Shown one piece after another: positions 2,220 through 53,678 of a stretch of DNA of 64,000 nucleotides (its first letter is position 1; each line of letters begins with the position of its first letter). A model generated the notes under the pieces. The model was not told the DNA's origin and made no database searches. It saw only the letters and a list, made by a program, of their open reading frames with translations. Origin of the DNA: Octopus sinensis (lineage: Eukaryota); contig NC_043016.1 of assembly GCF_006345805.1 (NCBI RefSeq), positions 16,926,001-16,990,000 on the forward strand, given 5' to 3'. A program made the translations under genes and the position numbers.

Positions 2220-2294
<75 letters not shown>

Positions 2295-2295
2295 G

Positions 2296-2330
<35 letters not shown>

Positions 2331-2390
2331 GTATATATATATTATATATATATAATATATATATATATATTATATTATATATATATATAT

Positions 2391-2449
<59 letters not shown>

Positions 2450-2462
2450 GTATATATATATA
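2220..2462. repeat. (TA)n microsatellite
   Basis: About 240 bp of TA with few interruptions; directly flanks the 489-bp array. Confidence 0.95.
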
Positions 2463-2584
2463 TCACAATCAAGGAACGGCCATAATAGGCCATTCACCCA
2501 CTAGAAATAACAGCCAAAAGCTTTAACCGCAAAATAACATCAATTCCGTAAACCAGGAGAAAATTAAAAAACATTTACCCTGTA

Positions 2585-2691
2585 ATTTCTTATACGATGC
2601 ACCGTTCCATCTACTGTTTAATGGTAAACTAACCTGATTAAATTAAATCAAGCCAATCTACCATAGGCCTTTAGATTCATCAGTAAGAAAT
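2585..2691 (-). ncRNA. Type I hammerhead ribozyme motif, unit 1 (core mutated, GGAAC)
   Basis: Minus strand: ATTTCTTA-CTGATGA-ATCTA..TAGAT-GGAAC-GGTGCATC-GTA-TAAGAAAT. The A-to-G change in GAAA predicts an inactive copy. Confidence 0.7.
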
Positions 2692-3073
2692 AGCCAAGTC
2701 GGAACAGATATTTTTCACGAGGCATTCCCGTCCCTGCCTCGGCAATATCTGACCTAAAATTTTCAAATCATCGCACTCGCGCCAAATTTATCGGCAGCAA
2801 ATAAATATAAGCCGCCGATTCCATTACGGAATTAACCAGAAAATTCATAATTAATCAATATAGGGTGCCAAAAAATTTTGTAGAATTTTTTTGCCACCAG
2901 CGGCCTAGTGGGAAAAAATTAAATAGTCATATACCATTTTTAAGTTCAACATCACAATCAAGGAACGGCCATAATAGGCCATTCACCCACTAGAAATAAC
3001 AGCCAAAAGCTTAAACCGCAAAATAACATCAATTCCGTAAACCAGGAGAAAATTAAAAAACATTTACCCTGTA

Positions 3074-3179
3074 ATTTCTTATACGATGCACCGTTTCATC
3101 TACTGTTTAATGGTAAACTAACCTGATTAAATTAAATCAAGCCAATCTACCATAGGCCCTTAGATTCATCAGTAAGAAT
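3074..3179 (-). ncRNA. Type I hammerhead ribozyme, unit 2
   Basis: Intact CTGATGA, GAAAC and GTA. Stem I is reduced to 6 bp by a 1-nt deletion; stem II ATCTA/TAGAT. Confidence 0.8.
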
Positions 3180-3561
3180 AGCCAAGTCGGAACAGATATT
3201 TTTCACGAGGCATTCCCGTCCCTGCCTCGGCAATATCTGACCTAAAATTTTCAAATCATCGCACTCGCGCCAAATTTATCGGCAGCAAATAAATATAAGC
3301 CGCCGATTCCATTACGGAATTAACCAGAAAATTCATAATTAATCAATATAGGGTGGCAAAAAATTTTGTAGAATTTTTTTGCCACCAGCGGCCTAGTGGG
3401 AAAAAATTAAATAGTCATATACCATTTTTAAGTTCAACATCACAATCAAGGAACGGCCATAATAGGCCATTCACCCACTAGAAATAACAGCCAAAAGCTT
3501 TAACCGCAAAATAACATCAATTCCGTAAACCAGGAGAAAATTAAAAAACATTTACCCTGTA

Positions 3562-3668
3562 ATTTCTTATACGATGCACCGTTTCATCTACTGTTTAATG
3601 GTAAACTAACCTGATTAAATTAAATCAAGCCAATCTACCATAGGCCCTTAGATTCATCAGTAAGAAAT
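3562..3668 (-). ncRNA. Type I hammerhead ribozyme, unit 3
   Basis: Stem I ATTTCTTA/TAAGAAAT (8 bp), CTGATGA, stem II ATCTA/TAGAT, GAAA, near-palindromic stem III CGGTGCATCG, GTA triplet. Predicted cut between 3570 and 3569. Confidence 0.85.
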
Positions 3669-4050
3669 AGCCAAGTCGGAACAGATATTTTTCACGAAGC
3701 ATTCCCGTCCCTGCCTCGGCAATATCTGACCTAAAATTTTCAAATCATAGCACTCGCGCCAAATTTATCGGCAGCAAATAAATATAAGCCGCCGATTCCA
3801 TTATGGAATTAACCAGAAAATTCATAATTAATCAATATAGGGTGGCAAAAAATTTTGTAGAATTTTTTTGCCACCAGCGGCCTAGTGGGAAAAAATTAAA
3901 TAGTCATATACCATTTTTAAGTTCAACATCACAATCAAGGAACGGCCATAATAGGCCATTCACCCACTAGAAATAACAGCCAAAAGCTTTAACCGCAAAA
4001 TAACATCAATTCCGTAAACCAGGAGAAAATTAAAAAACATTTACCCTGTA

Positions 4051-4157
4051 ATTTCTTATACGATGCACCGTTTCATCTACTGTTTAATGGTAAACTAACC
4101 TGATTAAATTAAATCAAGCCAATCTACCATAGGCCCTTAGATTCATCAGTAAGAAAT
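4051..4157 (-). ncRNA. Type I hammerhead ribozyme, unit 4
   Basis: Same intact fold as unit 3. Predicted cut between 4059 and 4058. Confidence 0.85.
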
Positions 4158-4482
4158 AGCCAAGTCGGAACAGATATTTTTCACGAGGCATTCCCGTCCC
4201 TGCCTCGGCAATATCTGACCTAAAATTTTCAAATCATCGCACTCGCGCCAAATTTATCGGCAGCAAATAAATATAAGCCGCCGATTCCATTACGGAATTA
4301 ACCAGAAAATTCATAATTAATCAATATAGGGTGGCAAAAAATTTTGTAGAATTTTTTTGCCACCAGCGGCCTAGTGGGAAAAAATTAAATAGTCATATAC
4401 CATTTTTAAGTTCAACATCTTTTCCCACTAGGCCGCTGGTGGCAAAAAAAATTGTACAAAATTTTTTGCCACCCTATATTGA

Positions 4483-4520
<38 letters not shown>

Positions 4521-4908
4521 TCACAATCAAGGAACGGCCATAATAGGCCATTCACCCACTAGAAATAACAGCCAAAGCTTCAACCGCAAAATAACATCAA
4601 TTCCATAAACCAGGAGAAAATTAAAAAACATTTACCCTGTAATTTCTTATACGATGCACCGTTTCATCTACTGTTTAATGGTAAACTAACCTGATTAAAT
4701 TAAATCAAGCCAATCTTCCATAGGCCCTTAGAATCATCAGTAAGAAATAGCCAAGTCGGAACAGGTATTTTCACGAGGCATTTCCGTCCCTGCCTTGGCA
4801 ATATCTGACCTAAAATTTTCAAATCATCGCACTCGCGCCAAATTTATCGGCAGCAAATAAATATAAGCCGCCGATTCCACCCTATTTTGCCACCCTATAT
4901 TGATTAAT
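4521..4908 (-). mobile_element. Second, truncated copy of the 489-bp family with its own short inverted tip
   Basis: Unit sequence runs 4521-4879, then the inverted fragment TTTTGCCACCCTATATTGATTAAT, then (TA)n. It carries private substitutions. Confidence 0.85.
4642..4748 (-). ncRNA. Type I hammerhead motif, copy 5 (first stem II pair broken)
   Basis: CTGATGA-TTCTA..TAGAT-GAAAC..GTA; T/T mismatch at the 10.1/11.1 pair. Confidence 0.65.
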
Positions 4909-4999
4909 ATATATATATATATATATATATACATACATATATATATGTATATGTGTGTATATGTATGTATGTATGTATGTACGTATATGTATATATATA

Positions 5000-5344
5000 T
5001 ATATATTATATATATATATATAATAAAATATTAGGGAATAAATCCAAACTTACAGGGAAAAATCAGATTTAGGAATGAATCCAATTTTATAGTAAAATAT
5101 TATATTATATTAAATTAGAGATAAAACCACTATTAGGCAAATCATACAATGAAAAACTTAAGCCAATACATAAGATTATTTAATTTATATTATTTAAATA
5201 TATAACAAAATTATTAAAAAAATATAATTAACATATCACTACGATCGTTTCATGGCTGTTAATAATATAAATTAAATAATCTTATGTATTGGCTTAAGTT
5301 TTTCATTGTATGATTTGCCTAATAGTGGTTTTGTCTCTAATTTA

Positions 5345-5350
<6 letters not shown>
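5000..5350 (-). mobile_element. Fold-back element in (TA)n, family A
   Basis: 88-bp arms 5107-5194 and 5261-5348 with one mismatch. The 66-nt spacer contains minus-strand GAAAC-GATC-GTA at 5240-5251. Confidence 0.7.
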
Positions 5351-5377
<27 letters not shown>

Positions 5378-12225: not shown

Positions 12226-13533
12226 GGCTATTATCATTATTAAAAGAACTTGGTTAGATTCGAAAATTCATATTTTGAAAAAGATGAGAGGAGTGAAGCA
12301 AAGAACCTTCTAATCTCACCTTGGATATTTATGTTGGCCACATATAATGAAGAGAGCTGAAGACCTTTTTCTTGTGTTTCTAACAAATGTTTGCCCAATG
12401 CATCAATAGAATTATTTTAATAAAAATAAAACCATGTTTCTTAGCAAATATGAATAAGAAGAAAACAAAAATAAATTATTACAGAGATGTACTTGCAAAC
12501 AAGGGACTTGATCTGAGATCGTGCGCTGAAACAAAAACAATTGCAGCGTGGAAGAGGTCTGTAAGCCATTTTGTCAGCAAACAGGTCACGTTTCAAAGCG
12601 ATGAAAATATTTTGGCACAAATTAAATTTAAATGTTGATGTGAAACTAACGGTTTTTGTGTGTTCTTAAATAGTTTACAAACATCTTCCACGTTGCAAAA
12701 ATAAACAATATAATAATTAAAATAAGCACATAGATTACACATCAAAGTAAATTTGCTGATTTTGATCTCATGACAAAGTAACCGAGAGCAATTGCCTTTT
12801 AATTTGTAGATTACACACTAAAGTAACACCCCCAAACTATATAGCAGTAGTTTTCAACCAGGTTTCCACCAGTACAGTCCAAGGGTTCTTCAGGAAGTTA
12901 CATAAATGCTAAAATCGACAGTAATTTTTAATTCTCCTGTGCAGCTATGTGTGTACATGTTAGGCCTACGTGCACATCTACGAGTTGCATGCCAGCTTAG
13001 ATGATGGTTTAGCTTTCTTTTGTAAAATACGAGTGACTATATTTGGAAGAAACATTTTAACTGCGTAAGACATTTAGGTGTTGCTGTTAATCCACCTTTT
13101 AAAAGATCTTTAGCTTTTTAAAAGGTGCTTTTGTAAAATCTTTTTCTTGTATGACGTTTATTAATATTTGGTCAAATGATAAGATTAAAAATTTCGAAAG
13201 AGGGTTGAATTACTTATGTAGAAAAAAAATAAGAAATAAGGAAACTGATACTAAATTATAAGATGTGTAAATATGCATAAATATTAATTCCTTACAAATT
13301 TCTAAATTAGAACAATGAACAAATAAACGACATTTTAAATTCAAATCCGAAAATCTATTTTAATTATTATATGCATATTGTTTAAGTATAATGAAATACC
13401 TATTACTAAAAAAAAACTAATAAAAAAGCTAAATTTTACATCGTTAAACTCGCTACACTTTAAAGATCATTTTGTCCTGCCACTATTAGGTTTGCTTTTA
13501 TATATATACAATTCTGTTTACAGCCTTACAAGT

Positions 13534-15151
13534 ATGGATAGATTTCTGAAAAAACGTAAGTTAGATACAGATGAAGAGACGCAGGGTCTGAGGCAGTCAG
13601 TTGAAGCTGCAGCCACGGCCAGTGATGCTGCCTCGTCGAAATTACCAAGAAATGATGGAATTAACCTGCAACTAAAAGTTTGTCAATATTGTGAAAACTA
13701 CATAGCTCTGGGATTTATTTGGACTGGAAACCCAGACTGCCCTTCACCTTTGTGTACTGTTTCTGGGGAGAAGCTGGCTAATAGTGCTATGGCACCAGCC
13801 AAACTGAAATGACACTTAACGACTAAACATCCAGAGTTGTCAGGCAAAAAAGAACAATATTTTAAAAGAGAATTGGCATTTAATAAAAGGCAAGTTTCTA
13901 TGTTTGCCAAAAAGTTCAAGTTGAGTGACGAAGGACAAGAAGCAAGTTATGCTGTGGCGGAGATAGTTGCAAGAAAAATGAAATCTCATACCATCGCTGA
14001 GACTGTAATTTTACCTGCATGCCAGGAAATAGTGAGGATAATGTTTGGAGAGGATGCTGTATCAAATTCCACTTTCTGACAACACAATAAGGAGACGTTG
14101 AGTGCAATATTAAGTCAAAAATACTGAAACATAAGTTGTTTGCACTTCATGTTGATGAGAGTACAGACATCACTGGTAAAGCACAGCTCCTTGTGTTTGT
14201 TCTTTTTATTAATGATGAAGCTATTGTAGAAGACTTCCTGTGTTGCAAAGAGTTGCCAGAAACAAAAAAAGGACAAGATGTATTTGATGTTTTGAATTCA
14301 TATTTAGAGTATTGTGGATTGAACTGGTAAAAACTGTGTTGGTATTTGTACAGATGGTGCCCCTGCAATGACAGGATGTCTTAAAGGCTTTGTCCCAATC
14401 GCACAAAAACAAAATCCAAATATTAACCATACTCATTGTTTCATTCATAGAGAAGCACTAGTTGCTAAAAATCTTGGACCTGAACTAAAATCTGCATTGG
14501 ATATGGTAGTGAAAATACATCAAGTTGAGGCCATTTAAATGCAAAACTTTGTGTGGGTATGGAAGCAGACCATTCCACCTTAATCCAGCACAAAAAAATA
14601 CGATGGTTGTCAAGGTGAAAAATATTGTCTCGTTTTTATGAACTAAGAGAAGAGTTATTGACTTTTTGTTTGCAAGAAAACCTGAAAGACTTTGTAGAAT
14701 GTTTGAGTGATGACCATTGGTGTTCCAAGTTAGCATATCTTGCCGATATATTTCATGAGCTAAACCTCTTGAACAATGGCATGCAGGGCAGGAACGAAAA
14801 CTTCTTGTCTTCTACTGACAAAATAAATGCTTTTCAGAAGAATTTGACAATATGGAAGAAACGGATAGCTGCAGGAAATTTGGAAATGTTTCCAAGTGTT
14901 TTTAAAAGGAATTGTCAAGAAACTGCGCTACTGATTTTGAACCATTTGCACACTTGTTAACAAATCTTGACAAATATTTTCCATCGATATCTGTTGACCA
15001 GTATGACTGGATTAGAAACCCATTTGTGGAATTTGAGCCATTTGAAGAACAGTTCACTTTAACAGAAGAAGAAGAACTTGCCGGTGTTTTAAATGACGGA
15101 ACATTAATATAATAATAACACAACAACAACAACAACAACACAATAATAATA

Positions 15152-15488: not shown

Positions 15489-16286
15489 GTTTTTGATGAG
15501 AATAAATGTAATCTATTCAAACTAAAGTTTTTTAAATACATGTTTTAATAATAACTGTAGATGCAAGAATAAAATTGCATATGTATTGCAAAACTGATGG
15601 AATCGTGTGTCAGAGAAACACTTTGGAACTTCTGGAGCTCTCACAGTCTCATCCGACCCTCACAATATGGATTTGTCCCTAACTCCAGCTGCAGTGATCA
15701 TCTTGTCGAGTTCCTTGAGGACATTACTCAGATCACTGACAGTGGCTCATGGGTGGATGTTGTCTACCTTGACTTTGCTAAGGCTGTGCCACACAAAAGG
15801 CTTATGGTGAAACTCTCTGCAATGGGTGTGAGGGATGATCTTTTTAACTGGTTGAAATCCTTCATTCTCAGCCGAAAGGAGGTAATCACAGTTCTAGGAC
15901 AGCATTCTACACCATATGAGATGTCATCGGGTGTACCACAGGGATCTGTTCTTGGTCCCCTCTTGTTTGTGGCATACATTAATGACATAGATGCCAATTT
16001 AAAGAATGCCACAGTATTAAAATATGCAGACGACATGAAGCTGTACCTTGAAATCAAGAGGACAGATCCTGTTGTCTACAGCTCTTTCCTGCAATCAGAC
16101 CTGGACACAATGCAGCAATGGATCACAGACTGGCAACTGAAACTGGCTGTGGACAAGTGTACCACCATGCATTTTGGGAGAAAAAACCTGCGTCCACATA
16201 CTCCCTCCACAACACTGATATCAAGAAATCCTCTTGCGAGCGTGACCTAGGCATCACTGTCAGCAGTGATTTGCGTTGGACAAAGC

Positions 16287-18774
16287 TGCTGGAGTTCTGC
16301 GATGCAAATAATCTTATGATTTGCAACACTAACTTCAGGAAACCTACCAGCCACCTAGTCACTTACCAATCGGGCCAACATACCAGCCAAATTGACTACA
16401 TCCTTACAAGGCAAAGGGAGAGATGGCTGCTTATAAATGCCAAAACCTTCCCAGGTGAAGAATGTACCCCACAACATAGACTGGTAGTTAGTGACTTTAG
16501 GATCAGGACTAGGAGGACAACCAGAAGACGACAAATATGGAGAAGAAGGATCTGGAAGCTTAAAGATCCTGCAAATGGACAGAGATTTAGGGACATATTA
16601 CTTGAAGCCTCTGACGAAGTAGAAGGGGATAGAGCATCACAGGGGGTAGAAGACAGCTGGACGTTTCTAAGGGACAACCTGCTGAGAGCCACTGACCAGA
16701 TCTGTGGCTGGTGCAAAGTCCCCTCTCGACCTAGAATAACGTGGTGGTGGAACAATATTGTAGACAGGGCTATTAGAGACAGGCTTGGAAGGTCTGGAAA
16801 AATGGGGGTAGCAGGGAATTGTATCAGACTGCCAAAAGAGAAGCTAGGAGACAGGTTTATTTAGCCAGAGGGGAAGCAGATAAGAAAAAATTTGCCAATG
16901 TTCTGCGCCGTGAGGACCAAAGACTGGAGGTGTTTCGTGTTGCAAGACAGTGTTTGAGAGAGAATCGTGATGTGGTAGGAGAGAAGTGTGTTCGCATGGA
17001 AGATGGTTCACTTGCGCTAAATGAGGATGCGAAGAGAGAGGTTTGGAGATGCCACTATGAAAGGTTGCTGAATGAAGAAAATGAATGGGATAAAAGAGTC
17101 TGCCGAATGTTGACCCAACAGAGGGACCAGCTATCCGAGTTGATAGTTCTGTGGTAGCTAAGGCAATTAGAAGCATGAAGACAGGGAAAGCCCCAGGCCC
17201 ATCAGGAATCACTGCAGAGATGCTCAAAATGTCTGGTAGTGTCGGCTATAGCCTAGTCACCCATATAGTTAATCAGGTGATACACAATGACTGGTGTAGC
17301 AGTATAATAGTCAACTGCTACAAAGGTAAAGGTGATGCCCTAGATACAAATAACTACAGAGGTATCAAGCTGTTGGACCAGGTGATGAAGGTTACGGAGA
17401 GGGTCATAGCCCAACTAATTAGAGAGAGAGTTAGTTTAGATGAGATGCAGTTTGGGTTTGTGCCAGGGAAAAGTACTACTGATGCTATATTCCTGGTAAG
17501 GCAGCTGCAGGAGAAATACCTAGCCAAAGATAAGCCCCTGTACCTGGCTTTTGTTGACATGGAGAAAGCCTTCGACAGGGTCCCCCGATCCCTTATCTGG
17601 TGGGCAATGAGAAAACTAGGGATAGATGAATGGTTAGTGAGAGCTGTGCGGGCCATGTATAGGGACGCCGCTAGTAGGGTGAGGGTTGGAAATGAGTACA
17701 GTGAAGAATTCCGGGTAGAGGTAGGGGTCCACCAAGGCTCAGTACTCAGCCCCCTCCTATTTATCATAGTCCTCCAGGCAATAACGGAGGAATTCAAGAC
17801 AGGATGCCCTTGGGAGCTCCTCTATGCTGATGACCTTGCTCTAATTGCTGTGTCACTATCAGAACTGGAGGAGAAGTTTCAGGTGTGGAAACAAGGATTA
17901 GAATCGAAGGGCCTCAGAGTCAATCTAGCTAAAACCAAAGTCGTATCAGTAGGAAGGTAGACAAATCACAAACACCTTCAGGTAGATGGCCCTGCTCGAT
18001 CTGTAGAAAAGGTGTAGGTAGAACTCTATAAGATGCACCAAGTGTAAGCTATGGACACATAAGAGATGCAGCAATGTCAAAGGAAGGCTAACTAGGAGAT
18101 GGTTTTTGTATGTGGCAGATGCTCAGGAACAATAAACACTGAAAATGCTCTGAGACCAACTTCCGTCACTTTCCAGGGAGAAAAACTAGAAATAGTTGAT
18201 AGTTTCCGTTACCTAGGTGACCAAGTCAGCAGCGGGGGTGTGTGCTGAAAGTGTAACTGCTAGAGTAAGAATAGCTTGGGCAAAGTTCAGAGAGCTCTTA
18301 CCTCTGCTGGTGACAAAAGGCCTCTCGCACAGAGTGAAAGGCAGACTGTATGATGCGTGTGTACGAACAGCCATGCTACATGGCAGTGAAACATGGGCCG
18401 TGACTGCTGAGGATATGCGTAAGCTCGCTAGAAATGAAGCCAGTATGCTCCGATGGATGTGTAATGCCGGTACTCACACTCGGCAGAGTGTAAGTACCTT
18501 GAGAGAAAAGCTGGACCTAAGAAGCATCAGTTGTGGTGTGCAAGAGAGACGTTTGCGCTGGTATGGTCATGTGGCGAGAATGGATGAAGATAGTTGTGTG
18601 AAAAAGTGCCACACCCTAGCGGTTGAGGGAACCTGTGGAAGAGGCAGACCCAGGAAAACCTGGGACGAGGTGGTGAAGCACGACCTTCGAACTTTAGGTC
18701 TCACTGAGGAAATGACTAGAGACCGAGACCTCTGGAAGTGTGCTGTGCGCGAGAAGACCCGGCAGGACAAGTGA
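16287..18774 (+). pseudogene. RTE endonuclease/reverse transcriptase ORF, frameshifted
   Basis: YRGIKLL, QFGF, FVDMEKAFDRV, GVHQGSVLSPLLF, LLYADDL, RLRWYGHV and GRGRPRKTW, spread over ORFs 16118, 16819, 17151 and 18217. Confidence 0.9.
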
Positions 18775-19387
18775 GTCCACAACCCGTGGCCTTCTACATG
18801 GGATGGAGCCAGCCTACGTATGCATACCTTCCCTTCTTGGGACACAAAACTCTACTTGTGAAGACGTGTTGAGGCAAGTGAGGATCAGAATCGAAATCGA
18901 TCAATGGAAATTGCGGATGTGCTACCAGTGCCGGTGGCATGTCGAAACTCTGCTTGTGAAGACCCATTGAGGCAAGTGAGGATCAGAATCGAAATCGATC
19001 AATGGAAATCGATCAATGGAAATTGCAGATGTGTTACCAGTGCCGGTGGCATGTAAGAGAACTTTCCGTTTCGCGACCGTTGCCAGCACCGCCCCGTTTC
19101 GTGTCCGTTGCCAGCCTCGCCTGGCCCTCGTGCCGGTGGCACATAAAAAGCACCATCCGTTCGTGGCCGTTTGCCAGCTCTGTCTGGCACCAGTGCGGGT
19201 GGCACGTAAAAAGCACCCACTACACTCACGGAGTGGTTGGCGTTAGGAAGGGCATCCAGCCGTAGAAACACTGCCAGATTTGACTGGGCCTGATGAAGCC
19301 TTCTGGCTTCACAGACCCCAGTAGAACCGTCCAACCCATGCTAGCATGGAAAACGGACGCTAAATGATGATGATGATGATGATGATG
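16287..19387 (+). mobile_element. RTE-clade LINE, 5'-truncated, relatively young
   Basis: Endonuclease end (SQIDYIL..QHRLVV), RT, 3' UTR and (GAT)n tail. TSD AAAGC at 16282-16286 and 19388-19392. Confidence 0.92.
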
Positions 19388-20939
19388 AAAGCATATCTCT
19401 AAAATTGTCAAGAAGACCGAGGGTGTCTTGGCATCACTCAGCAAGACTTTTGTTAGCCGCTCTCCAGCCATCTATTTAAAACTGTATACAGCTACGGTAC
19501 GGCCACACTTGGAATTCGCATCATCAGTTTGGAACCCCTATCTTGCTCATAACATTGACCTCCTGGAATCTATCCAGAGACGTGCAACCAAACGCATACC
19601 CTCCATCAGACACCTACCATATTCTGAGCGCCTTGTTTCCCTGGGCATGGATTCACTGAAGCTCCGGCGTCTGGCGATGGACTTGGTAAACACCCACAAA
19701 GTTATCAACCACCTCACCAACAACAACAACACTGAACACCTTTTTGATCTCCATGTGTCTAACACACATGGACATGCCTACAAAGTCAGAAAACAACACA
19801 GCTCCCATGACTTTCGGAAACATTTTTTCACGCTCAGAGTTGCTGAAGCATGGAATAAACTGCCTGCATCAGTTGCTGACTGCCATGACACTGCATCCTT
19901 TAAGGCCCTCATGCTTCCCGAAATCCGCCGAAACTACACCTGATCATATATACACTTTAGATGAGTTGTAGTGCACCTGAGCACTGCACACAATGTTTTT
20001 ATTATTATTATATTATTATGTACATGACAATTTTTTTTACAGTTTGTGTTTTTATTGTAAATAAATCTGAACATAAGTATTTTCATTTCATTAATTAAAT
20101 GCTGTTTTTGCATAAGACAATCAAATTATTGCACAGGGGTTCCTCGAGCCAGTAGAATGTTTCCTTGGGGTTCCGTTCCAGCAAAAAGGTTGAAAAGCAC
20201 TGATCTATATAATAACAAAGAAAGCGAGAGGAGTTGATTCCCTTGATTATTGGCTACGGGGTTGTGTCCCTTGTAACTTTTCTTTTTTTTTTTTTTGCAA
20301 AGGACTGTCAAACGTTATAATTATTTCCAAGTAACATAATGTTTTATCTGCAGTAGCGGACCAAATATCTGACATGCTTGAGGCCGGATTTCTGGATTTT
20401 CCGGTTTTCTGGAGATAGTCATAATAGATACTTAAAATATAACATAAACTATGAAAAGTAAAGAACTAAATTGTCATTTAATAGATTTAAATTAATACTC
20501 TTCTAAAGCTGGGTCTATTTCATATTAATTCACTTAAAATTCCTGCTATTTATCATACTCTTCAATCTAAACAGTATAGTGTTTATAAGATAAAAATCAA
20601 ATTAAAAAAGTAAAACATATGATTTTATTTAACTGATGCAGGTACAAACCAATACACTTCTAAATCAGCGTATAAATCCTTAAAATCCTTAAAATTGTTT
20701 TAGCCCGAAGGCCGCGGCCATGCTGGGGCACCACTGCTGATGTTTAATCTCTGTCAATAAATTTTAAAAAACGAAAACCAAATCTTCAAAATGTAAATGT
20801 AAATTAACTAATTTCAAAAACATTTTCAAAGGTATTTTGTGTTGTTTTAATTTTTTTTGGGTGCGGTGAGGCCGGGGTGGTTGTAATTCCACATTTCTGA
20901 AAGCTGAATAAGATGTCCAGTACTGTATCATATATTACA

Positions 20940-24199: not shown

Positions 24200-24890
24200 A
24201 GACAATATTTTGTGTCTATGTCACACCACGTTTTTGTCCTTGTCTGTTATCCCAATTGAGTGTCATAACTCTTACTTTGATATCGTTCATAGCTCCTGCT
24301 CTTGAAAATGCAACATAATTGGCCATGAGAAAATACCAGTTGAGGCAAATGTATTCCAACTTTTTTCAAATGTTTGCCCTTGAGCCTTATTCATTGTCAC
24401 TGAATATGTAAGTCAAAGTGGAAACTGAAGTCTGTTTAGTGAGAATGGAGCATCTGCATCACTTGGGCTAAGTTTAATTCTGGGAATTAGAACTGTACGA
24501 CCTCTGTTGGAGCCATTTACCAATGATGCCTCTGCACAATGTTCATGAAGTCTTTGCACTTTCATGCGAGTTCCATTACATAATCCTTGACTGATCGAAA
24601 GATTTCTTAGCAGCATTACATTAGACCCTACTTTTAAGTTGAGACAATGAGGAGGCAAACCGGATGGAGTGAGTGAGTTTATGAATTCAAATGGATAGTT
24701 CTGAACCTCCTCTTCACTATTGCAGGACACTGAATCTGTGCTTAAGTACGTTTTAAATGCCTCTGGTATAATATTAAGGACTTTTTCATTTATTGCAAGA
24801 CAGTCAGAATTTTTAGGAGATGAAATTACTTGTTTTTCCATTTCTTCTGGTGTGCAGTTGTTGAAAATTTCTGGGTACAAATGTACGAAT
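24200..24890 (-). pseudogene. Helitron PIF1-like helicase C-terminal remnant
   Basis: INSLTPSGLPPHCLNLKVGSNVMLLRNL..GLCNGTR..IPRI..RLQFPL*LTYSVTMNKAQGQT..VFSHGQL. Confidence 0.88.
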
Positions 24891-30302: not shown

Positions 30303-33300
30303 GAAATGAAGACAGAAACAGGTGTGCTGCTGTAAAGGAAATACATGGTCACCCAACCTAAGGGAAGTGCAAGGAGAAGGAGAAAGAGAGAGAGTGAGAG
30401 ACATCAGGATAGAGATGGTGGCAAAGTGCCGGGCATACACACAAGGAAAGGGGATCAGGATATAAATGGGATGGTGAAGGAAGAGAGAGATAGAAGGTGG
30501 AAAGTGCCTTGAGGTTCAAACACCATAATATAAGGGGCAGGATATTAACAAAGAAGTGTGATTAGAGAGTGGGAAGGAGAAGCGAGTGGTGAAAACCTGG
30601 GTTTATATAGAGTGGTGGTGGTGGGCTATTGCATAGCAATGATACAGAGAAACAGGGCCAAGAGAACAGGATTAGGGAGTGAGAGGTAGGCATACTGTAT
30701 GAAAGAAGAGAAGAGATGTAGAGACATAGTTTGGTTTGTTGTGGTAGGGTGTGTGTTACGTGTGGGTGGGACACACAGCACTTCTAGAACTCAGTTTTGA
30801 TGATGTTGGTGGGTCATCTCAAGAACCTCATATTGCCAGACATCTCAGTCCCTTGTCATTTCCTCTGTGAAGCCAACATTCTGAGATCAGTCCTTACCAC
30901 TTCATCGCATATCTTCCTGGGTCTTCCTCTTCCGTGGGTACCATCCACTTTCAGTGATCAGCCCTTCTTTATACAACTGTCTTCATTCATACACATCACA
31001 TGTCCAAACTAATGTAGTCTTCTCTCTTGCATTCTACTGTTGATTCCTCTTATGCCCAGCTTTTCTCTCAATATATTTGCAGTTTGTCGTACATGTGCAC
31101 TGATGTTGCACATCCAATGGAGCATACTACCTTCATTTCTCTCCAGTCTAAACATGTCTTCTGCATTCAGAGCCCATGTCTCACTACCACGGAGTACTGC
31201 TGTTTGCACACAAGCATCATACAGTCTACCTTCCACTCTGAGAGAGAGGCCTTTTGTTGCCAACAGAGGTAATAGCTCTCTGAACTTCCTCCACCTTATT
31301 TTTATTTTAGAAATAATACTTTCAGAGCATCCTCCACCATTGCTTATTTGGTCACCTAGGCAACAGAATCCATCTATAACCCCAAGAGAACCTCGTGGGC
31401 ATTTGAAAGTCCCATGTGCTCTTAGTGCTTATTGTTCCTGCACATCTGCCACATACAAAGACAACTTTATCTGTCTTTGATTCCACTGCACCTCTTAGGT
31501 GTCCATAGCTTACACTGGCTGCAGTGAATGGAATTCCTTCCAACTCCTTTCCTACACATTGAGCAGGGCCATTTTACCTGATGGAAAGAGAGTTTTATCT
31601 TCTTCTTATTAACAACTTTGGTATTTGCTAAGATAACTTTAAGGCCCTTTGATTCCAGGTTTTATTTCCATATGTGGAATTTTTTCTCCAATTCTACTAA
31701 AGATTCTTCAATAAGAGCAAAGTCATCAGCATATAGCAGTTCCTATGGGCACCTAGTTTTGAATTCCTCTGTTATGGCCTGGAAAACTATAATGAATGAG
31801 TGGACTGAGAAGTGAGTGCTGGTGAACCCTTACTTGTACGCTAAATTCATCACTGTATTCAAGACCGACTCTCACCTTACTAACAGCACCATTGTACATG
31901 GTTTGTACAGCTCTAACAAACCACTCCTTTACTCTTAACTTCCTTAGAGGACACCAGTTAACAAAGCAGGGGACTATGTCGAAACCTTTCTCCAGGTCAA
32001 TGAAAGCTAAGAACAATGGTTTACTTTTGGCCAAATATTTTTCCTGCAGCTGTCTCACTAAGAAGATGGCATCTGTGGTACTCTTCCCAGGAACAAAACC
32101 AAACCGCATCTCATCTAGTTTAATTCCTAATCAATTCAACTATAACCCTCTCAGCAATTTTCCTGACTTTGTCTAGCAGTTTGATACCTCTGTGGTTGTT
32201 TCTATCTAAAGCATCACCTTTACCCTTGTAGCAGCTGACTATAATACTACTATACCAGTCATTGTGGATGATGCCCTCCTGAATAACCTGATTAACTATA
32301 CGAGTGACTAAGCAGTATCCTACGCCACTGGAAATTTTAATCATCTTGGCAGTGATTCCTGATGGTCAAGGGACTTTCCCTGTCTTCATGTCCTTAATTT
32401 CCTTACCTATTATTCTGCTATCAACTCTGATGACTAGTCCCTCTATTGGTTCCATATTTGGTAGACTCTCCTTCTCTAATTCATTTTCCATTTAGTAACC
32501 TTTCATAGTGGTTCTTCGATGGATTTTCTTCTCTGAGTCACTAAGTGCAAGCACACGATTGTCCATTTGCACACATTTCTCTCCTAACACATCTCTGTTC
32601 TCTCAGATACACAGCTTTGCAATCCTGAACACCTCATGCGTCTGATCCTTACACTGTAGAACATTTTCAAATCTCTTACCTTCAGCTCCTTCTTTTGCTA
32701 TGTATATCTGATGCCTAGCTGCCCTTTTGGCTATCTGATAGAATTCTCTGCTTCCACCATTTTACCAGTCTTTCCAAGCCTGTCTTTTGGCTTTTATAGC
32801 ACTTCCAATTTCCTTACTCCATCACCATCTCACCCTTGGTCTACCTGGGACTCTGTGCCAACCACAGATTTCATTTGTAGCCCTCAGTAGATTGTTCTGC
32901 TGGAAATTCCACTTGTCCTCTAAGCTATATGCTTCCAACTCTTCCTCTTGTCAGAAGCTTCAATTAGCAAATCTCTAAATTTTTGTCTGTTTGCTGGGTC
33001 TTTGAGCTTCCATAGTCTTCTTTTCCAGATTGGTTTATTTCTCCAGGTCTTTCTAGCTCTAATTCAGAAGTCACTAACTAGTAACCTATCTTGGTTTGTA
33101 TGCTCTTCACCTGGGAAAGACTTTATATTTTTAAGCATCCATTTATCTCATTGCCTGGTGTGGAGGTAGTCAGTTTGGCTTATGTGCACACCAGACTGAT
33201 AAGTGATTAGGTGGCTGCTGGTTTTTTGAAGTTAGTCAGATCATGAGATTATTTGCATCACAGAACTCCAGCAGTCTTGTTTCCTCCTCATTTCTAGGTT

Positions 33301-41284: not shown

Positions 41285-41490
41285 TATCTTTTACTTGTTT
41301 CATTTGTTTCACTGCAGCCATGCTGGAGCACCACCTTGACGGCTTTTAGTCAAACAAATCAACCCTAAGACCTAGTTTTTAAAGTCAAGTATTTATTCTA
41401 TCAGTCTTTTTGGCTGAACTGCTAAGTTATGGAGGACATAAACACACCAACAAAGGTTGTCAAGCATTGGAGGGGGACAATATATATGTG
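41285..41490 (-). mobile_element. SINE ((TAAAAGAG)n family), 3' half
   Basis: CTTTTATCTTTTACTTGTTTC..GCAGCCATGCTGGAGCACCACC..GACATAAACACACCAAC. Confidence 0.75.
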
Positions 41491-43420
41491 TGTGTATGTT
41501 TATATGTACATGTATGTAAGTGTGTATGTATGTATGAATGTATGTATGAATGTATGTATGTATGTATGAATGTATGTATGTATGAATGTATGTATGTATG
41601 TATGTATGTATGTATGTATGTATGTATGTATGAATGTATGTATGTATGAATGTATGTATGTATGTATGAATGTATGTATGTATGAATGTATGTATGTATG
41701 TATGTATGTATGAATGTATGTATGAATGTATGTATGTATGAATGTATGTATGAATGTATGTATGTATGTATGAATGTATGTATGTATGTATGAATGTATG
41801 TATGTATGTATGAATGTATGTATGAATGTTGTATGTATGTATGTATGTATGTATGTATGTATGTATGTATGTATGTATGTATGTATGTATGAATGTATGT
41901 ATGAATGTATGTATGTATGTATGAATGTATGTATGTATGAATGTATGTATGTATGTATGTATGTATGTATGTATGTATGTATGTATGTATGTATGTATGT
42001 ATGAATGTATGTATGAATGTATGTATGTATGTATGAATGTATGTATGTATGAATGTATGTATGTATGTATGAATGTATGTATGTATGAATGTATGTATGT
42101 ATGTATGTATGTATGTATGAATGTATGTATGTATGAATGTATGTATGTATGTATGTATGTATGAATGTATGTATGAATGTATGTATGTATGAATGTATGT
42201 ATGAATGTATGTATGAATGTATGTATGTATGAATGTATGTATGTATGTATGTATGTATGAATGTATGTATGTATGTATGTATGTATGAATGTATGTATGT
42301 ATGAATGTATGTATGTATGTATGTATGTATGAATGTATGTATGAATGTATGTATGTATGTATGAATGTATGTATGTATGAATGTATGTATGTATGTATGT
42401 ATGTATGAATGTATGTATGAATGTATGTATGTATGAATGTATGTATGAATGTATGTATGAATGTATGTATGTATGAATGTATGTATGTATGTATGTATGT
42501 ATGAATGTATGTATGAATGTATGTATGTATGTATGAATGTATGTATGTATGAATGTATGTATGTATGTATGTATGTATGTATGCATGTATGTATGTATGC
42601 ATGTATGTATGTATGTATGTATGTATGTATGTATGTATGTATGCATGTATGTATGAATGTATGTATGTATGTATGTATGTATGAATGTATGTATGTATGT
42701 ATGAATGTATGTATGTATGAATGTATGTATGTATGTATGTATGTATGAATGTATGTATGAATGTATGTATGTATGAATGTATGTATGTATGTATGTATGT
42801 ATGAATGTATGTATGTATGTATGAATGTATGTATGTATGTATGTGTGTATGTATTTATGTATGTACGTATGTATGTATGTATGTATGTATGAATGTATGT
42901 ATGTATGTATGTATGTATAAATGTATGTATGTATGTATGAATGTATGTATGTGTGTATGTATGTATGTATTTATGTATGTACGTATGTATGTATGTATGT
43001 ATGTATGAATGTATGTATGTATGTATGTATGTATGTATGTATGTATGTATGTATGTATGTATGTATGTATGTATGTATGTATGTATGTATGTATGTATGA
43101 ATGTATGTATGTATGTATTTATGTATGTACGTATGTATGTATGTATGTATGTATGTGTATGTATGTATGTATGTATGTATGTATGTGTGTGTGTGTGTAT
43201 GTATGTATGTATGCATGTATGTGTGTATGTATGTATGTGTGTATGTATGTGTGTGTGTGTATGTATGTATGTGTGTATGTATGTATGTATGTGTGTATGT
43301 ATGTGTGTATGTATGTATGTATGTATGTATGTATGTGTGTATGTATGTATGTATGTGTGTATGTATGTGTGTATGTATGTATGTATGTGTGTATGTATGT
43401 GTGTATGTATGTATGCATGC
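41490..43420. repeat. Giant (ATGT)n microsatellite with GAAT and GTGT variants
   Basis: About 1.9 kb, expanded from the microsatellite position of the adjacent SINE. Confidence 0.95.
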
Positions 43421-44344
43421 ATATATGCAAGCATATAAGTATGGGAAATTTGACTGGCAACTGTTGGTGCTACCACCTGCAGTTGCTTTCAAAGTAAGAG
43501 AAGGAGAGAAAGAGAGTTTACTAAGAAATAAAAGAGAGGGCGAGGTTTCCTTTAAGGGGAGAGAACCAGTGAGGGTTCATAATTTCTGCTTTGTTATTAT
43601 GAGAGGTCTTTTCTTGTAAGTGAGAAAACATGAAATAATATTTCCATATAACCCCCTTTTTTTCTCCTTTTGAGTGTCCTAGTAGCTGTAGACCATGTTG
43701 TTTTATTCTTCTTATGAGCTCCCCAATACGATATGACTTGGAATCATGAAATTAGTTGATCTGTGTTCATTTAAAACATTTAGGAATTATATAGGCTTAA
43801 TTTTCTTTTGTATTTTTCTTTTTTTATTTCTTGCTCAACAGTGGAAAGAGATTGAGTGACAGAAATATATATAATGCACTGATCCATGATTATAAATATA
43901 TGAAGTGAGTTTTCAGGGACATGTTATCCAGGTGGATACCATGTTTGTTCTCAGTTCGGTTACAGATGCCAGCTAACACAACAGCCTGTACTTGGTGCAC
44001 TTACCTATAATATGTTGTTAAACATTGGTAAATTTTCTAGTTGGGTAACTCCCTGTGTCCTACTCAGGACTACAAAGGTTCTGCAGTGTGTAAAATAACA
44101 TTAATAATAAGGAGAATTGAGATTTGCACATCAATAGTTTATTTTACATTTATATTCACAGCATATTACCATGACCTGCATCTGTTTCCCCTGTTGTGAC
44201 TGCATACTGTTGCAAATGCAACCTTGCAATATTGTCAGTGCAGTTTCCTCAGGGCTTCTACCTTAGGTCTGCTTTGAATTAAAATAAATTACTAATATGC
44301 AAATCTCCATTCTCCTTGTGGCCAATGACAGTGTCACCTTGATC

Positions 44345-48417: not shown

Positions 48418-49130
48418 CATCATCATCATCATCATTTAACGTCCGCTTTCCATGCTAGCATGGGTTGGACGGTTCAACTGGGGTCTGGGGAGCCCGAAGG
48501 CTGCACCAGGCCAGTCAGATCTGGCAGTGTTTCTACAGCTGGATGCCCTTCCTAACGCCAACCACTCCGAGAGTGTAGTGGGTGATTTTATGTGCCACCG
48601 ATACAGGTGCCAGACGAGGCTGGCGAACGGCCACGCTCGGATGGTGTTTTTATGTGCCACCGACACAGGTGCCAGATGAGGCTGGCGAACGGCCATGATC
48701 AGATGGTGTTTGTTACGTGCCCACAGCACGAAGGCCAGTCGATGCGGTACTGGCTATGGCCACGTTCGGATGGTTTTCTTGTGTGCCACCGGCACTGGTA
48801 CCACAAAGATACAAATTCCATTGATGTTCATCTATTTTGATTTGTATCTTTGTGGTACCAGTGCCGGTGGCACACAAGAATACCATCTGAATGTGGCCGT
48901 AGCCAGTACCGCATCGACTGGCCTCCGTGCTGTGGACACGTAACAAACACCATCCAATCGTGGCCGTTCACCAGCCTCATCTGGCACCTGTGTCGGTGGC
49001 ACATAAAAACACCATCCGAAAACCCGGCAAGACTAGTCAGGCCATAACCCGTGGCCCCTACCTGGGACATAGTCAGTCCACCTGTGCATACCTTCCTTCT
49101 TGTGACACTTGTGAAGACCTGTTGAGGCAA
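48418..49130 (-). mobile_element. Rearranged RTE 3' UTR with an internal fold-back
   Basis: Minus-strand tail, about three 62-bp modules, 179-bp inverted arms 48638-48816 and 48840-49018, then a plus-strand copy of the UTR start (compare 18760-18880). Confidence 0.8.
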
Positions 49131-49613: not shown

Positions 49614-49779
49614 GATATAAAGTGGTTGGCATCAGGAAGGGCATCCATCTGTAGACACCAAGCCAAAACAAGCTATGGAACCTGGTGCAACCCTGGCCTT
49701 ACCAGCTCCTGTCAAACCATCCAACCCATTCCAGTATGGAAGCAGTCATTAAATGATGATGATGCTTTATATTACGTAA

Positions 49780-50657
49780 TACATACATATATATATACAT
49801 ACGTATGTACATACATACATACACACACACACACATACATACATACATACATACATACATACACACACATACAGACATACATACACACACATATACATAC
49901 ATAGATACATACATGCAAGCATGCATACATACACACACTCATACATACACACACACATACATACATACATACATGCATGCATGCATACATACATACATAC
50001 ATACATACATGCATGCATACATGCATACATGCATACATACATACATACATACATACATACATACATACATACATGCATACATGCATACGTACATACATAC
50101 ATACATACATACATACATGCATGCATGCATACATACATACATACATACATACATACATACATACATGCATGCATGCATACATGCATACATGCATACATAC
50201 ATACATACATACATACATACATACATACATGCATGCATGCATACATACATACACACACATACATACATACATACATACATACATACATACATGCATGCAT
50301 ACATGCATACATGCATACATACATACATACACACACACATACATACATACATACATACATACATACATACATACATGCATACATACATACATGCATGCAT
50401 ACATGCATACATGCATACATACATACATACATACATACATGCATACATGCATACGTACATACATAATACATACATACATACATACATACATACATACATA
50501 CATACACACACCATACATACATACATACATACATACATACATACATACATACATACATACATGCATACATGCATACATACATACATACACACACACATAC
50601 ATACATACATACATACATACATACATACATACATACATGCATACATGCATACGTACA

Positions 50658-50689
<32 letters not shown>

Positions 50690-50733
50690 CATACATACAT
50701 ACATACATATACATACATACATACATACATATA
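49780..50733. repeat. (ATAC)n microsatellite with ATGC variants
   Basis: About 0.95 kb; opposite orientation to the 41490-43420 tract. Confidence 0.95.
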
Positions 50734-53630: not shown

Positions 53631-53643
53631 CACTTCCAGTCCT

Positions 53644-53678
<35 letters not shown>

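What the first reader, a model, noticed from the sequence alone, without database searches (positions are those of the whole stretch)
2463..4490. 489-bp tandem array with a complete type I hammerhead in every unit: candidate octopus non-LTR retrozyme
Seen: each unit's minus strand reads ATTTCTTA-CTGATGA-ATCTA..TAGAT-GAAA-CGGTGCATCG-TA-TAAGAAAT. That is an 8-bp stem I, an intact core, stem II, a near-palindromic stem III and a GTA cleavage triplet. Units 2-4 are intact and unit 1 has GGAAC. Predicted cuts at 3082/3081, 3570/3569 and 4059/4058 would release 488- and 489-nt monomers. There is no coding capacity. Established: tandem non-coding monomers with type I hammerheads (Schistosoma Sm-alpha, newt satellite 2, non-LTR retrozymes of bivalves, cnidarians and amphibians) are processed to monomeric linear and circular RNAs, and palindromic stem III motifs act as dimers. 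Inference: this is such an element, probably mobilised by PLE enzymes. The monomer is longer than the roughly 150-400 nt I recall as typical. I cannot check whether it has already been described.
Basis: partly seen in the sequence, partly recalled or inferred. Interest (0 to 1): 0.92.

Follow-up and report, generated by a model that had tools for sequence, protein, structure and literature searches.

The report
Octopus tandem repeat carrying hammerhead ribozymes
A 489-bp non-coding repeat, present four-and-a-bit times in an octopus genome window, carries a complete self-cleaving hammerhead ribozyme motif in each unit and looks like a retrozyme, a known kind of small mobile element in animals not yet described for cephalopods in the papers I could search; no cutting or RNA was tested here.

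Summary
Four head-to-tail 489-bp units (2462-4419) each carry, on the minus strand, a type I hammerhead: 8-bp helix I, CUGAUGA, helix II, GAAA, helix III and a GUA cut site. The predicted cuts and the 488/489-nt monomers are correct.

Corrections:
- Unit 2 has a 1-nt deletion that leaves helix I at 6 bp.
- Helix II is 5 bp, an internal loop and a 19-bp extension.
- The base pair at the foot of helix II is A-U, not the usual G-C.
- The element runs on to 4908, with a fifth, older, truncated copy and two short inverted fragments.

My descriptor finds only these motifs in 128 kb, against 0-1 hits per 20 Mb of random sequence. Rfam does not recognise the motif.

Three features agree on minus-strand RNA: ribozyme polarity, a much stronger fold, and insertion anatomy. 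That anatomy is a shared 3' end, 5' truncation and 5' inverted pieces inside a (TA)n microsatellite.

Best reading: a non-LTR retrozyme, a known kind. Monomer size is within the published range. No related copies, transcripts or cleavage could be checked. The in-window copies show no selection on the core.

The parts
2220..2461 (.). (TA)n microsatellite flanking the 3' end of the element, read in ribozyme sense. Probably the insertion target, or possibly a tail.
   Evidence: TRF: 2220-2463, period 2, 126 copies; sequence.
2462..4419 (-). Tandem array of four 489-bp units plus 3 nt. Units start at 2462, 2951, 3439 and 3928 on the + strand. Both ends fall in the same repeat phase.
   Evidence: All 8 variable sites are private to one unit. 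G+C is 36%.
2585..2691 (-). Hammerhead of unit 1. The core change A13 to G (GGAA) is expected to inactivate it. The would-be cut is 2593/2592.
   Evidence: Alignment; the descriptor does not hit it.
3074..3179 (-). Hammerhead of unit 2. The core is intact and helix I is reduced to 6 bp by a 1-nt deletion. Cut 3082/3081.
3562..3668 (-). Hammerhead of unit 3. Helix I is 8 bp. Core CUGAUGA. Helix II is 5 bp, an internal loop and a 19-bp extension (3598-3641). GAAA follows. Helix III is A-U, C-G, G-C, G.U with a palindromic UGCA loop. The cut follows GUA at 3570/3569.
   Evidence: The hammerhead fold is -32.0 against an MFE of -33.8 kcal/mol.
4051..4157 (-). Hammerhead of unit 4, identical to the unit 3 motif. 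Cut 4059/4058.
4420..4490 (+). Inverted fragment of the unit (plus-strand unit positions 458 to 386). It abuts the 5' end of the array in ribozyme sense. Its outer end lies at the AT-rich TAATTA next to (TA)n.
   Evidence: BLASTN: unit 386-458 against 4490-4417, 96% identity; sequence.
4491..4519 (.). Internal (TA)n separating the two insertions.
   Evidence: TRF: 4488-4518.
4520..4879 (-). Fifth copy. It is 5'-truncated in ribozyme sense (unit positions 1-362) and has the same 3' boundary as the array. It shows 9 changes in 362 nt. Its hammerhead at 4642-4748 has a U10.1-U11.1 mismatch.
   Evidence: 2.5% against 0.41% divergence, Poisson P about 2.5e-5.
4885..4908 (+). Second inverted fragment (unit positions 412 to 389) at the 5' side of the fifth copy. 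It ends at the same AT-rich site as the first.
   Evidence: BLASTN, 100% over 24 nt; sequence.
4909..5022 (.). (TA)n / (TATG)n microsatellite on the other flank.
   Evidence: TRF: 4907-5022; sequence.
2474..2495 (-). 8-bp hairpin (GAAUGGCC / GGCCGUUC) lying 12 nt from the 3' end of the element in ribozyme sense. A possible recognition element for a reverse transcriptase (speculative).
   Evidence: Predicted in both the MFE and centroid folds of the monomer.

Best explanation
This is a non-LTR retrozyme of an octopus: a small non-coding retroelement whose working form is minus-strand RNA.

Proposed cycle:
1. Multimeric minus-strand transcripts fold a type I hammerhead in each unit. Helix III is weak alone but forms a 12-bp duplex between two units, so the motif probably acts as a double hammerhead.
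2. [quoted passage not shown]
3. A host tRNA-type ligase circularises the monomers.
4. A reverse transcriptase from an autonomous element copies the circle, or an uncleaved multimer, at a nick in a (TA)n microsatellite. A Penelope-like element is the leading candidate and a LINE is not excluded.
5. The result is a tandem insertion.

Shown here: the motif, the array, the lack of coding capacity, the strand-specific fold, and the insertion anatomy.

Inferred from published retrozyme work: transcription, cleavage, circularisation, the identity of the reverse transcriptase, and rolling-circle copying.
For: 1. All core positions are present (C3-A9, G12-A14, A15.1-U16.1, H17 = A) with three helices in type I order. 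This holds in units 2-4, and in unit 1 apart from one core change.
2. The chance rate of the descriptor is at most 1 per 20 Mb. The unit on both strands is about 1 kb.
3. The hammerhead fold lies within 1.8 kcal/mol of the motif's MFE, and helices I and II appear in the MFE itself.
4. Strand asymmetry is strong. The minus-strand monomer folds at -150.7 kcal/mol (z -5.9) and the plus strand at -99.9 (z -4.0). The circular fold has 31 G.U pairs against 5. The 19-bp extension of helix II has five G.U pairs and no A-C mismatch, so it exists only in minus-strand RNA.
5. Insertion anatomy fits reverse transcription of minus-strand RNA:
   - There are two copies of different age (0.4% and 2.5% divergence).
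   - Both share the same 3' boundary, ...GATTGTGAT next to (AT)n.
   - One is 5'-truncated.
   - Both have a short inverted fragment at the 5' side that starts at the same AU-rich site.
   - Both lie in (TA)n.
   PMC8557442 lists partial tandems, 5' truncation and an adjacent inverted 5'-truncated copy as features of Penelope-like elements, and (TA)n as the preferred target of the Naiad clade.
6. The published criteria for non-LTR retrozymes are met (PMC7229834).
7. The genus is Octopus. Young Penelope families are reported in O. vulgaris (PMC13282606).
Against: - Rfam hammerhead models do not reach threshold, or even E<=10 in the 3.1-kb scan.
- The A10.1-U11.1 pair replaces the G-C pair described as highly conserved (PMC4209133, PMC3088659).
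- Helix I has no internal loop, and no canonical loop 1-loop 2 contact is recognisable.
- The long helix II is atypical for metazoan type I motifs, which are described as helix I 6 bp and helix II 4 bp (PMC4209133).
- In-window copies show no purifying selection on the ribozyme. 5 of 17 changes fall in the 107-nt motif, where 3.7 are expected. Two of them hit A13 and position 10.1.
- No related copy could be retrieved from any collection, so there is no covariation evidence.
- No PLE lies in the window.
- The inverted fragments are internal pieces. They are not 5'-truncated copies that keep the canonical 3' end, as described for PLEs.
Confidence: 0.7

Rival explanations
1. A relic. The repeat descends from a hammerhead-bearing element, but this family's ribozyme no longer cleaves usefully. 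The array is now an ordinary minisatellite kept and expanded by DNA-level processes such as slippage or unequal exchange.
For: - A10.1-U11.1, an atypical helix II, no recognisable tertiary contact and no Rfam hit.
- Changes in the copies hit the core as often as the rest of the unit.
- The array ends are in phase, at 4 units plus 3 nt. Slippage between short ATC repeats could also give this.
Against: - Three of five motifs keep every core position and all three helices.
- The units are 99% identical and all 8 variants are private, which points to one recent burst.
- A second copy of different age has the same 3' end and the same kind of 5' inversion. That argues for repeated insertion, not only local expansion.
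- Natural retrozyme hammerheads with a weaker U-U at 10.1-11.1 still cleave (PMC7229834, PMC3088659).
Confidence: 0.17
2. A SINE-like partner of a LINE or PLE that moves as linear RNA. It would have defined 5' and 3' ends, a 3' hairpin and an (AT)n tail. Tandem units would arise by template jumping, and the hammerhead would play no part in making the template.
For: - The 3' boundary is identical in both copies. It lies 131 nt downstream of the cut site, not at it.
- An 8-bp hairpin sits 12 nt from that end.
- The array is an integral number of units, with roughly 1.4% chance under random ends.
- LINE reverse-transcriptase fragments are common in the window.
Against: - BLASTN of the unit against the window finds no similarity to any LINE there.
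- There is no tRNA-like head.
- Several U-runs on both strands argue against Pol III.
- A reverse transcriptase stalling at its own primer after whole turns of a circle also gives integral copies.
- This rival overlaps the main model in everything except the shape of the template.
Confidence: 0.08
3. A DNA transposon with internal tandem repeats, of Helitron/Helentron or MITE type. The hammerhead-like motif would be fortuitous.
For: - The plus strand starts with TC after an A.
- A 13-bp G+C-rich hairpin lies 16 nt from the right end.
- The flanks are TA-rich.
- A Pif1-type helicase fragment lies at 24413-24880.
- A MITE-like palindrome lies next door at 5101-5354.
Against: - There is no CTRR 3' end, no terminal inverted repeats of its own and no unique left or right arms. 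The whole element is made of the repeat unit.
- The chance rate of a complete hammerhead is about 5e-5 per unit or lower.
- The strand-specific G.U-rich fold is not expected for a DNA element.
Confidence: 0.04

Closest known systems
Non-LTR retrozymes of invertebrates, especially the mussel Mytilus galloprovincialis (Cervera & de la Pena 2020, PMC7229834)
   Same: - Tandem non-coding units, each with a type I hammerhead.
- Low G+C.
- No LTR.
- A highly self-paired monomer.
- Both hosts are molluscs.
- The mussel motifs also lack most of the canonical loop 1-loop 2 nucleotides.
   Different: - The unit is 489 bp against 350-390 bp.
- Helix II carries a 19-bp extension.
- A-U at 10.1-11.1.
- Helix I is 8 bp with no loop.
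- Expression and circles are shown for the mussel, not for this element.
pDo500 satellite of Dolichopoda cave crickets (Rojas et al. 2000; PMC2837043)
   Same: - A satellite unit of about 500 bp with an embedded hammerhead.
- A G.U pair in helix III.
- A dimeric (double-hammerhead) model has been proposed.
   Different: - The pDo500 motif is compact (49 nt) against 107 nt here.
- pDo500 makes up about 5% of a cricket genome and is conserved across species, with compensatory changes.
- Here only one locus is known.
Newt satellite 2 and axolotl retrozymes Rtz_331 / Rtz_353 (PMC7229834)
   Same: - A weak helix III with a palindromic tetraloop, so that two motifs pair into an active dimer.
- HHR_Amex2 tolerates a non-G-C base of helix II (a U-U mismatch). 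The fifth copy here has the same mismatch.
   Different: - The amphibian helix III has 1-2 bp. Here it has 4 bp including a G.U.
- The amphibian motifs keep the canonical tertiary contacts.
- The amphibian units are 330-350 bp.
Penelope-like elements and their pLTR hammerheads (PMC4209133, PMC8557442, bioRxiv 10.64898/2026.07.22.740005)
   Same: - Type I hammerhead.
- Tandem arrangement.
- 5' truncation.
- An inverted piece at the 5' side.
- Insertion into a microsatellite, with (TA)n named for Naiads.
- Retrozymes have been proposed to derive from pLTRs.
   Different: - There is no RT or GIY-YIG ORF here.
- PLE motifs are minimal and lack helix III. This one has a full helix III.
- No min-HHR occurs elsewhere in the window.
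- The inverted pieces here are internal fragments.
Schistosoma Sm-alpha
   Same: A repetitive non-coding element with a type I hammerhead.
   Different: From my own knowledge, Sm-alpha is a dispersed SINE-like element with a Pol III-type promoter. Here there is no tRNA-like head, and U-runs would stop Pol III.

Membership tests
Hammerhead ribozyme, type I | Conserved core: C3 U4 G5 A6 N7 G8 A9, G12 A13 A14, A15.1-U16.1, and H17 not G. | tested here: met
   CUGAUGA, GAAA and GUA are present in units 2-4 and in copy 5. Unit 1 has A13G.
Hammerhead ribozyme, type I | Three helices around the core, with helix I open-ended. | tested here: met
   Helix I is 8 bp (6 bp in unit 2). Helix II is 5 bp plus a 19-bp extension. 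Helix III is 4 bp with a UGCA loop. The constrained fold is -32.0 against an MFE of -33.8 kcal/mol.
Hammerhead ribozyme, type I | G10.1-C11.1 pair at the base of helix II. Highly conserved but not absolute. | tested here: not met
   A-U in units 1-4 and U-U in copy 5. Natural active motifs with U-U are on record (PMC3088659, PMC7229834).
Hammerhead ribozyme, type I | Score at or above the gathering threshold of an Rfam hammerhead covariance model. | tested here: not met
   No hit at gathering score or at E<=10. The best result is 12.4 bits to Hammerhead_3, with a gathering score of 48.5, on a 151-nt slice. The likely reason is the 56-nt insert in helix II, which I could not test by deleting it.
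Hammerhead ribozyme, type I | Tertiary contact between helix I and helix II elements. | tested here: inconclusive
   There is no loop 1. A 4-bp pairing is possible between GGCU upstream of helix I and GGCC in the helix II internal loop. It is too short to tell from chance (sequence).
Hammerhead ribozyme, type I | Self-cleavage at the predicted site. | not testable with these tools
   Needs in vitro transcription or RNA-seq read ends.
Non-LTR retrozyme (PMC7229834) | Head-to-tail repeats of a few hundred bp, each with a type I hammerhead. | tested here: met
   Four units plus a fifth partial copy. 489 bp lies within the published 51-972 bp range (bioRxiv 10.64898/2026.07.22.740005).
Non-LTR retrozyme (PMC7229834) | Non-coding, G+C below 50%, and no LTR, PBS or PPT. 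| tested here: met
   The longest ORF is 55 aa. G+C is 36%. The element is made only of the repeat unit.
Non-LTR retrozyme (PMC7229834) | The monomer is predicted to be stable and highly self-paired. | tested here: met
   -150.7 kcal/mol with z -5.9. The circular fold has 65% of bases paired.
Non-LTR retrozyme (PMC7229834) | Expressed as monomeric linear and circular RNA. | not testable with these tools
   No transcriptome access.
Non-LTR retrozyme (PMC7229834) | Dispersed multi-copy family, with the hammerhead conserved among copies. | tested here: inconclusive
   Two insertions of different age lie at one locus. No other copy could be retrieved.
Non-LTR retrozyme (PMC7229834) | Co-occurrence with autonomous Penelope-like elements in the genome. 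| not tested
   None in the window. The literature reports Penelope families in O. vulgaris (PMC13282606).
Penelope-like element | An ORF with RT and GIY-YIG endonuclease between pLTRs. | tested here: not met
   There is no ORF over 55 aa in the element. The window ORFs scanned match only RVT_1 and a Pif1 2B domain, with no endonuclease domain.
Helitron / Helentron non-autonomous element | 5'-TC and 3'-CTRR ends with a subterminal hairpin, inserted between A and T. | tested here: not met
   A TC start and a hairpin are present, but the 3' end is ...GATTAATTA, with no CTRR.
tRNA-derived SINE | A tRNA-like head with a Pol III promoter. | tested here: not met
   ARAGORN finds nothing in the window. 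T5-T7 runs occur on both strands.

The most novel reading that the evidence does not exclude
This would be the first cephalopod retrozyme. It carries a hammerhead architecture that Rfam models miss: a long, G.U-rich helix II extension and A-U at 10.1-11.1. Censuses that rely on those models alone could then undercount such elements.

The two junction sets preserve footprints of how retrozymes integrate:
- target-primed reverse transcription in (TA)n;
- a second, internal priming event at an AU-rich site that gives the 5' inversion;
- a fixed 3' end 131 nt downstream of the cut site.

That last point would mean the template was a circle or an uncleaved multimer, not a cleaved linear monomer.
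Probability: 0.4. Interest if true: 0.5.

Novelty: new member of a known kind. Interest (0 to 1): 0.38.

Why it matters
Retrozymes are a known, widespread source of small ribozyme-made circular RNAs in animals. Which enzyme moves them, and from what template, is still only hypothesised (PMC7229834, PMC7761336). A cephalopod member would extend their known host range within molluscs.

This locus adds two specific things:
- A hammerhead variant that scored below threshold in Rfam here.
- Two datable insertions whose junctions agree in polarity with the ribozyme and resemble Penelope-type integration into a (TA)n microsatellite.

A genome-wide survey of such junctions in octopus could test the proposed PLE link directly. 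It is not a new kind of system.

Tried and rejected
- Rfam at gathering score, at E<=10 on 3.1 kb and at E<=10 on a 151-nt slice gave no usable hammerhead hit. The miRNA and snoRNA-like hits are (TA)n or hairpin artefacts.
- Exact-pattern scans for the ribozyme region found nothing in metagenome contigs, viral contigs or prokaryote genome contigs. The gapped pattern gave one metagenome hit, L001. On reading, it has no helix I or III, so I took it for a chance match.
- I tried to reach other copies through ORFs of the unit. The 42-aa ORF is not on record, and the 55-aa ORF has no word-sharing candidate.
- I tried to reach an orthologous locus through neighbouring TE-derived proteins. L003 and L004 from O. 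vulgaris GCA_951406725.2 are paralogous TE copies (about 80-96% identity) without the repeat.
- Species identification through the LINE RT ORF gave only unnamed ENA assemblies at 56-82% identity. Two further window ORFs are not on record. The hAT-like ORF then gave Octopus names.
- There is no PLE ORF in the window, no PLE-type minimal hammerhead and no tRNA-like sequence.
- Helitron-type ends were checked and not found.
- Literature searches for retrozyme or hammerhead together with octopus or cephalopod found no description of this element. The nearest items are 235 Rfam Hammerhead_1 hits listed for the giant squid genome (PMC6962438) and repeat annotation of O. vulgaris without ribozymes (PMC13282606).
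Full report
**What is there**

TRF reports one array at 2462-4419 with period 489, 4.0 copies and 99% matches. BLASTN of one unit against the window finds:
- four full units starting at 2462, 2951, 3439 and 3928, at 98.8-100% identity;
- a fifth partial copy at 4520-4879 (unit positions 1-362);
- two short inverted fragments at 4417-4490 (unit positions 458 to 386) and 4885-4908 (412 to 389);
- nothing elsewhere in the 64 kb.

The composite lies inside (TA)n. Microsatellite runs sit at 2220-2463, 4488-4518 and 4907-5022. The longest ORF in the element is 55 aa and G+C is 36%.

**The ribozyme motif**

On the minus strand each unit reads: AUUUCUUA / CUGAUGA / AUCUA ... UAGAU / GAAA / CGGUGCAUCG / UA / UAAGAAAU.

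In standard numbering the features are:
- Every core position is present: C3-A9, G12-A14, A15.1-U16.1, and H17 = A within a GUA triplet.
- Helix I has 8 Watson-Crick pairs.
- Helix II has 5 pairs.
- Helix III is A-U, C-G, G-C, G.U closed by the palindromic loop UGCA.
- The 58 nt inside helix II are not a loop. They form an internal loop and a 19-bp hairpin with five G.U pairs.
- The full hammerhead fold costs only 1.8 kcal/mol more than the MFE of the 107-nt motif, and helices I and II are in the MFE itself.

The predicted cuts at 3082/3081, 3570/3569 and 4059/4058 and the 488/489-nt products are correct.

State of the individual copies:
- Unit 1 has A13-to-G.
- Unit 2 has a 1-nt deletion that leaves helix I at 6 bp.
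- Copy 5 has U at 10.1, giving a U-U mismatch, plus a change in the helix II extension.

**Is it chance?**

A generic type I descriptor with a full core (helix I >=5 bp, II >=4 bp, III >=3 bp, helix II span up to about 100 nt) hits only units 2-4 in both strands of the window. In 20 Mb of first-order Markov sequence with the unit's composition it gives 0 hits. With the window's composition it gives 1 hit. At the observed stem lengths it gives 0 in both. For about 1 kb of unit sequence on both strands the expectation is about 5e-5 or less.

**Where it departs from the canonical motif**

- Rfam gives no hammerhead hit at gathering score or at E<=10 on 3.1 kb.
- On a 151-nt slice the only hammerhead-clan match is Hammerhead_3 at 12.4 bits, E=5.3, against a gathering score of 48.5. 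It aligns the two core boxes with the wrong helix assignment.
- Canonical metazoan type I motifs are described as helix I 6 bp, helix II 4 bp, helix III 1-2 bp with a small palindromic loop, and a highly conserved G10.1-C11.1 (PMC4209133).
- Here helix I has no loop, helix II is long, and 10.1-11.1 is A-U.
- Natural motifs with U-U at that position do cleave (PMC3088659; HHR_Amex2 in PMC7229834), so the A-U pair is a caution rather than a disqualification.

**Helix III and dimers**

Alone the hairpin is marginal at -0.2 kcal/mol. Two copies of ACGGUGCAUCGU pair over all 12 positions at -17.5 kcal/mol. This is the arrangement through which newt, axolotl and PLE hammerheads act as dimers (PMC7229834, PMC4209133).

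**Which strand matters**

Three independent features point to minus-strand RNA.

1. The ribozyme polarity is minus.
2. The fold is much stronger on the minus strand.
   - The minus-strand monomer folds at -150.7 kcal/mol (z -5.9). The plus strand folds at -99.9 (z -4.0).
   - As circles the values are -145.9 with 65% of bases paired and 31 G.U pairs, against -97.1 with 5 G.U pairs.
3. The insertion anatomy, read in minus sense, fits.
   - The array and copy 5 end at the same nucleotide, ...CCUUGAUUGUGAU, followed by (AU)n.
   - Copy 5 is 5'-truncated.
   - Each has at its 5' side a short inverted piece whose outer end lies at the same AU-rich site (UAAUUA) next to (TA)n.
   - A common 3' end, variable 5' ends and 5' inversions are what target-primed reverse transcription with a second internal priming event produces. 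This is my own knowledge of twin priming in LINE-1.
   - Read in plus sense the pattern makes no such sense.

**One event or two?**

Units 1-4 differ from their consensus at 8 sites in 1956 nt (0.41%). Every variant is private to one unit, as expected if all four were made at once. Copy 5 has 9 changes in 362 nt (2.5%, Poisson P about 2.5e-5). So there were at least two events, or two source variants, at this microsatellite. That is evidence for mobility rather than local expansion alone.

**Ends of the array**

The array is 4 units plus 3 nt, so both ends fall in the same phase. The chance is about 1.4% if the ends were random. The 3' end lies 131 nt downstream of the last cut site, not at it. 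A cleaved linear monomer was therefore not the template.

Three processes would all give whole units, and I cannot separate them here:
- a circle copied for whole turns, with the enzyme stalling at its own primer;
- an uncleaved multimer;
- template jumping between linear RNAs with defined ends.

**Link to Penelope-like elements**

PMC8557442 describes PLE insertions as 5'-truncated and organised in partial tandems, often with an inverted 5'-truncated copy immediately at the 5' end. Microsatellite targets are reported, with (TA)n named for Naiads. The locus resembles this.

The limits of the resemblance are:
- The inverted pieces here are internal fragments.
- No RT/GIY-YIG ORF lies in the window. 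The ORFs I scanned match only RVT_1 and a Pif1 2B domain.
- No PLE-type minimal hammerhead occurs elsewhere in the window.

A 2026 preprint argues that animal retrozymes derive from PLE pLTRs and gives consensus lengths of 51-972 bp (10.64898/2026.07.22.740005). So 489 bp is not exceptional. The cricket pDo500 satellite is also about 500 bp (PMC2837043).

**Organism**

A hAT-like ORF at 13378-13812 is 92% identical to an Octopus vulgaris protein, 91% to O. sinensis and 89% to O. bimaculoides. One partial O. vulgaris match is 100% identical. Two O. vulgaris loci fetched through these proteins are paralogous TE copies without the repeat. The window is from an Octopus genome. I did not determine the species.

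**What could not be done**

No collection open to me holds cephalopod DNA in searchable form.
- DNA pattern scans gave nothing real.
- ORF-based look-ups failed.

So there is no covariation test and no copy-number estimate. In these, 5 of 17 changes fall in the 107-nt motif where 3.7 are expected, and two hit essential positions. The inserted DNA copies therefore appear to decay neutrally. That is expected for retroelement copies and neither supports nor refutes function of the source RNA.

**Prior description**

Full-text searches for retrozyme or hammerhead with octopus or cephalopod found no description of this element. The giant squid genome paper lists 235 Rfam Hammerhead_1 hits without analysis (PMC6962438). 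The 2026 O. vulgaris repeat annotation reports Penelope families, some young, and no ribozymes (PMC13282606). The retrozyme papers name a mussel as the mollusc example (PMC7229834, PMC7761336).

**Verdict**

The retrozyme interpretation is the best-supported one, at about 0.7. It is a new member of a known kind, with an atypical hammerhead periphery and informative insertion junctions. Activity, expression and family size remain to be shown. Interest is 0.38.

Noticed in passing
window 56205-64000 (runs off the end); also 19098-19217 and 48581-48721: A G+C-rich 56-bp satellite with about 138 copies at 91% matches. Related 62-63-bp units occur as two-copy arrays at two other places, one in reverse orientation among LINE ORFs and one at 48.6 kb. 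The satellite looks like an expansion of a short tandem carried by a dispersed element. Its long ORFs are repeat artefacts.
   Followed up: partly
window 5101-5354: A MITE-like palindrome next to the retrozyme's (TA)n flank. It has 94-nt arms at 98% complementarity, 66 nt apart, and is itself flanked by AT repeats.
   Followed up: no
window 15597-19943; also 1605-2057, 31753-32109, 53302-53682: Fragments of LINE-type retrotransposons. RVT_1 matches reach E = 4.9e-32, with broken and overlapping frames. The closest database relatives are 56-82% identical, mostly in unnamed ENA assemblies. O. vulgaris holds DNA copies at 83-96% identity.
   Followed up: partly
window 13378-14960: ORFs derived from a hAT / FAM200 / ZBED5-like transposase. 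They have no Pfam hit of their own, but are 89-92% identical to annotated Octopus proteins. This is what identifies the genus.
   Followed up: partly
window 24413-24880: A minus-strand ORF with a Pif1 helicase 2B domain (E = 1.8e-20). It is probably a Helitron remnant.
   Followed up: no
window 41489-43427 and 49779-50731: Two long tetranucleotide arrays, (TGTA)n of about 1.9 kb and (ATAC)n of about 0.95 kb. They are reverse complements of each other and bracket about 6 kb.
   Followed up: no
window 55106-55699: A 199-bp tandem repeat with 3 copies at 96% matches, just upstream of the 56-bp satellite.
   Followed up: no
window 3841-3875 (same position in each unit): Each unit holds a near-perfect hairpin with a 13-bp stem (GGUGGCAAAAAA...UUUUUUUGCCACC). 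Both inverted fragments include or abut it, so it may be where the template switch happened.
   Followed up: partly
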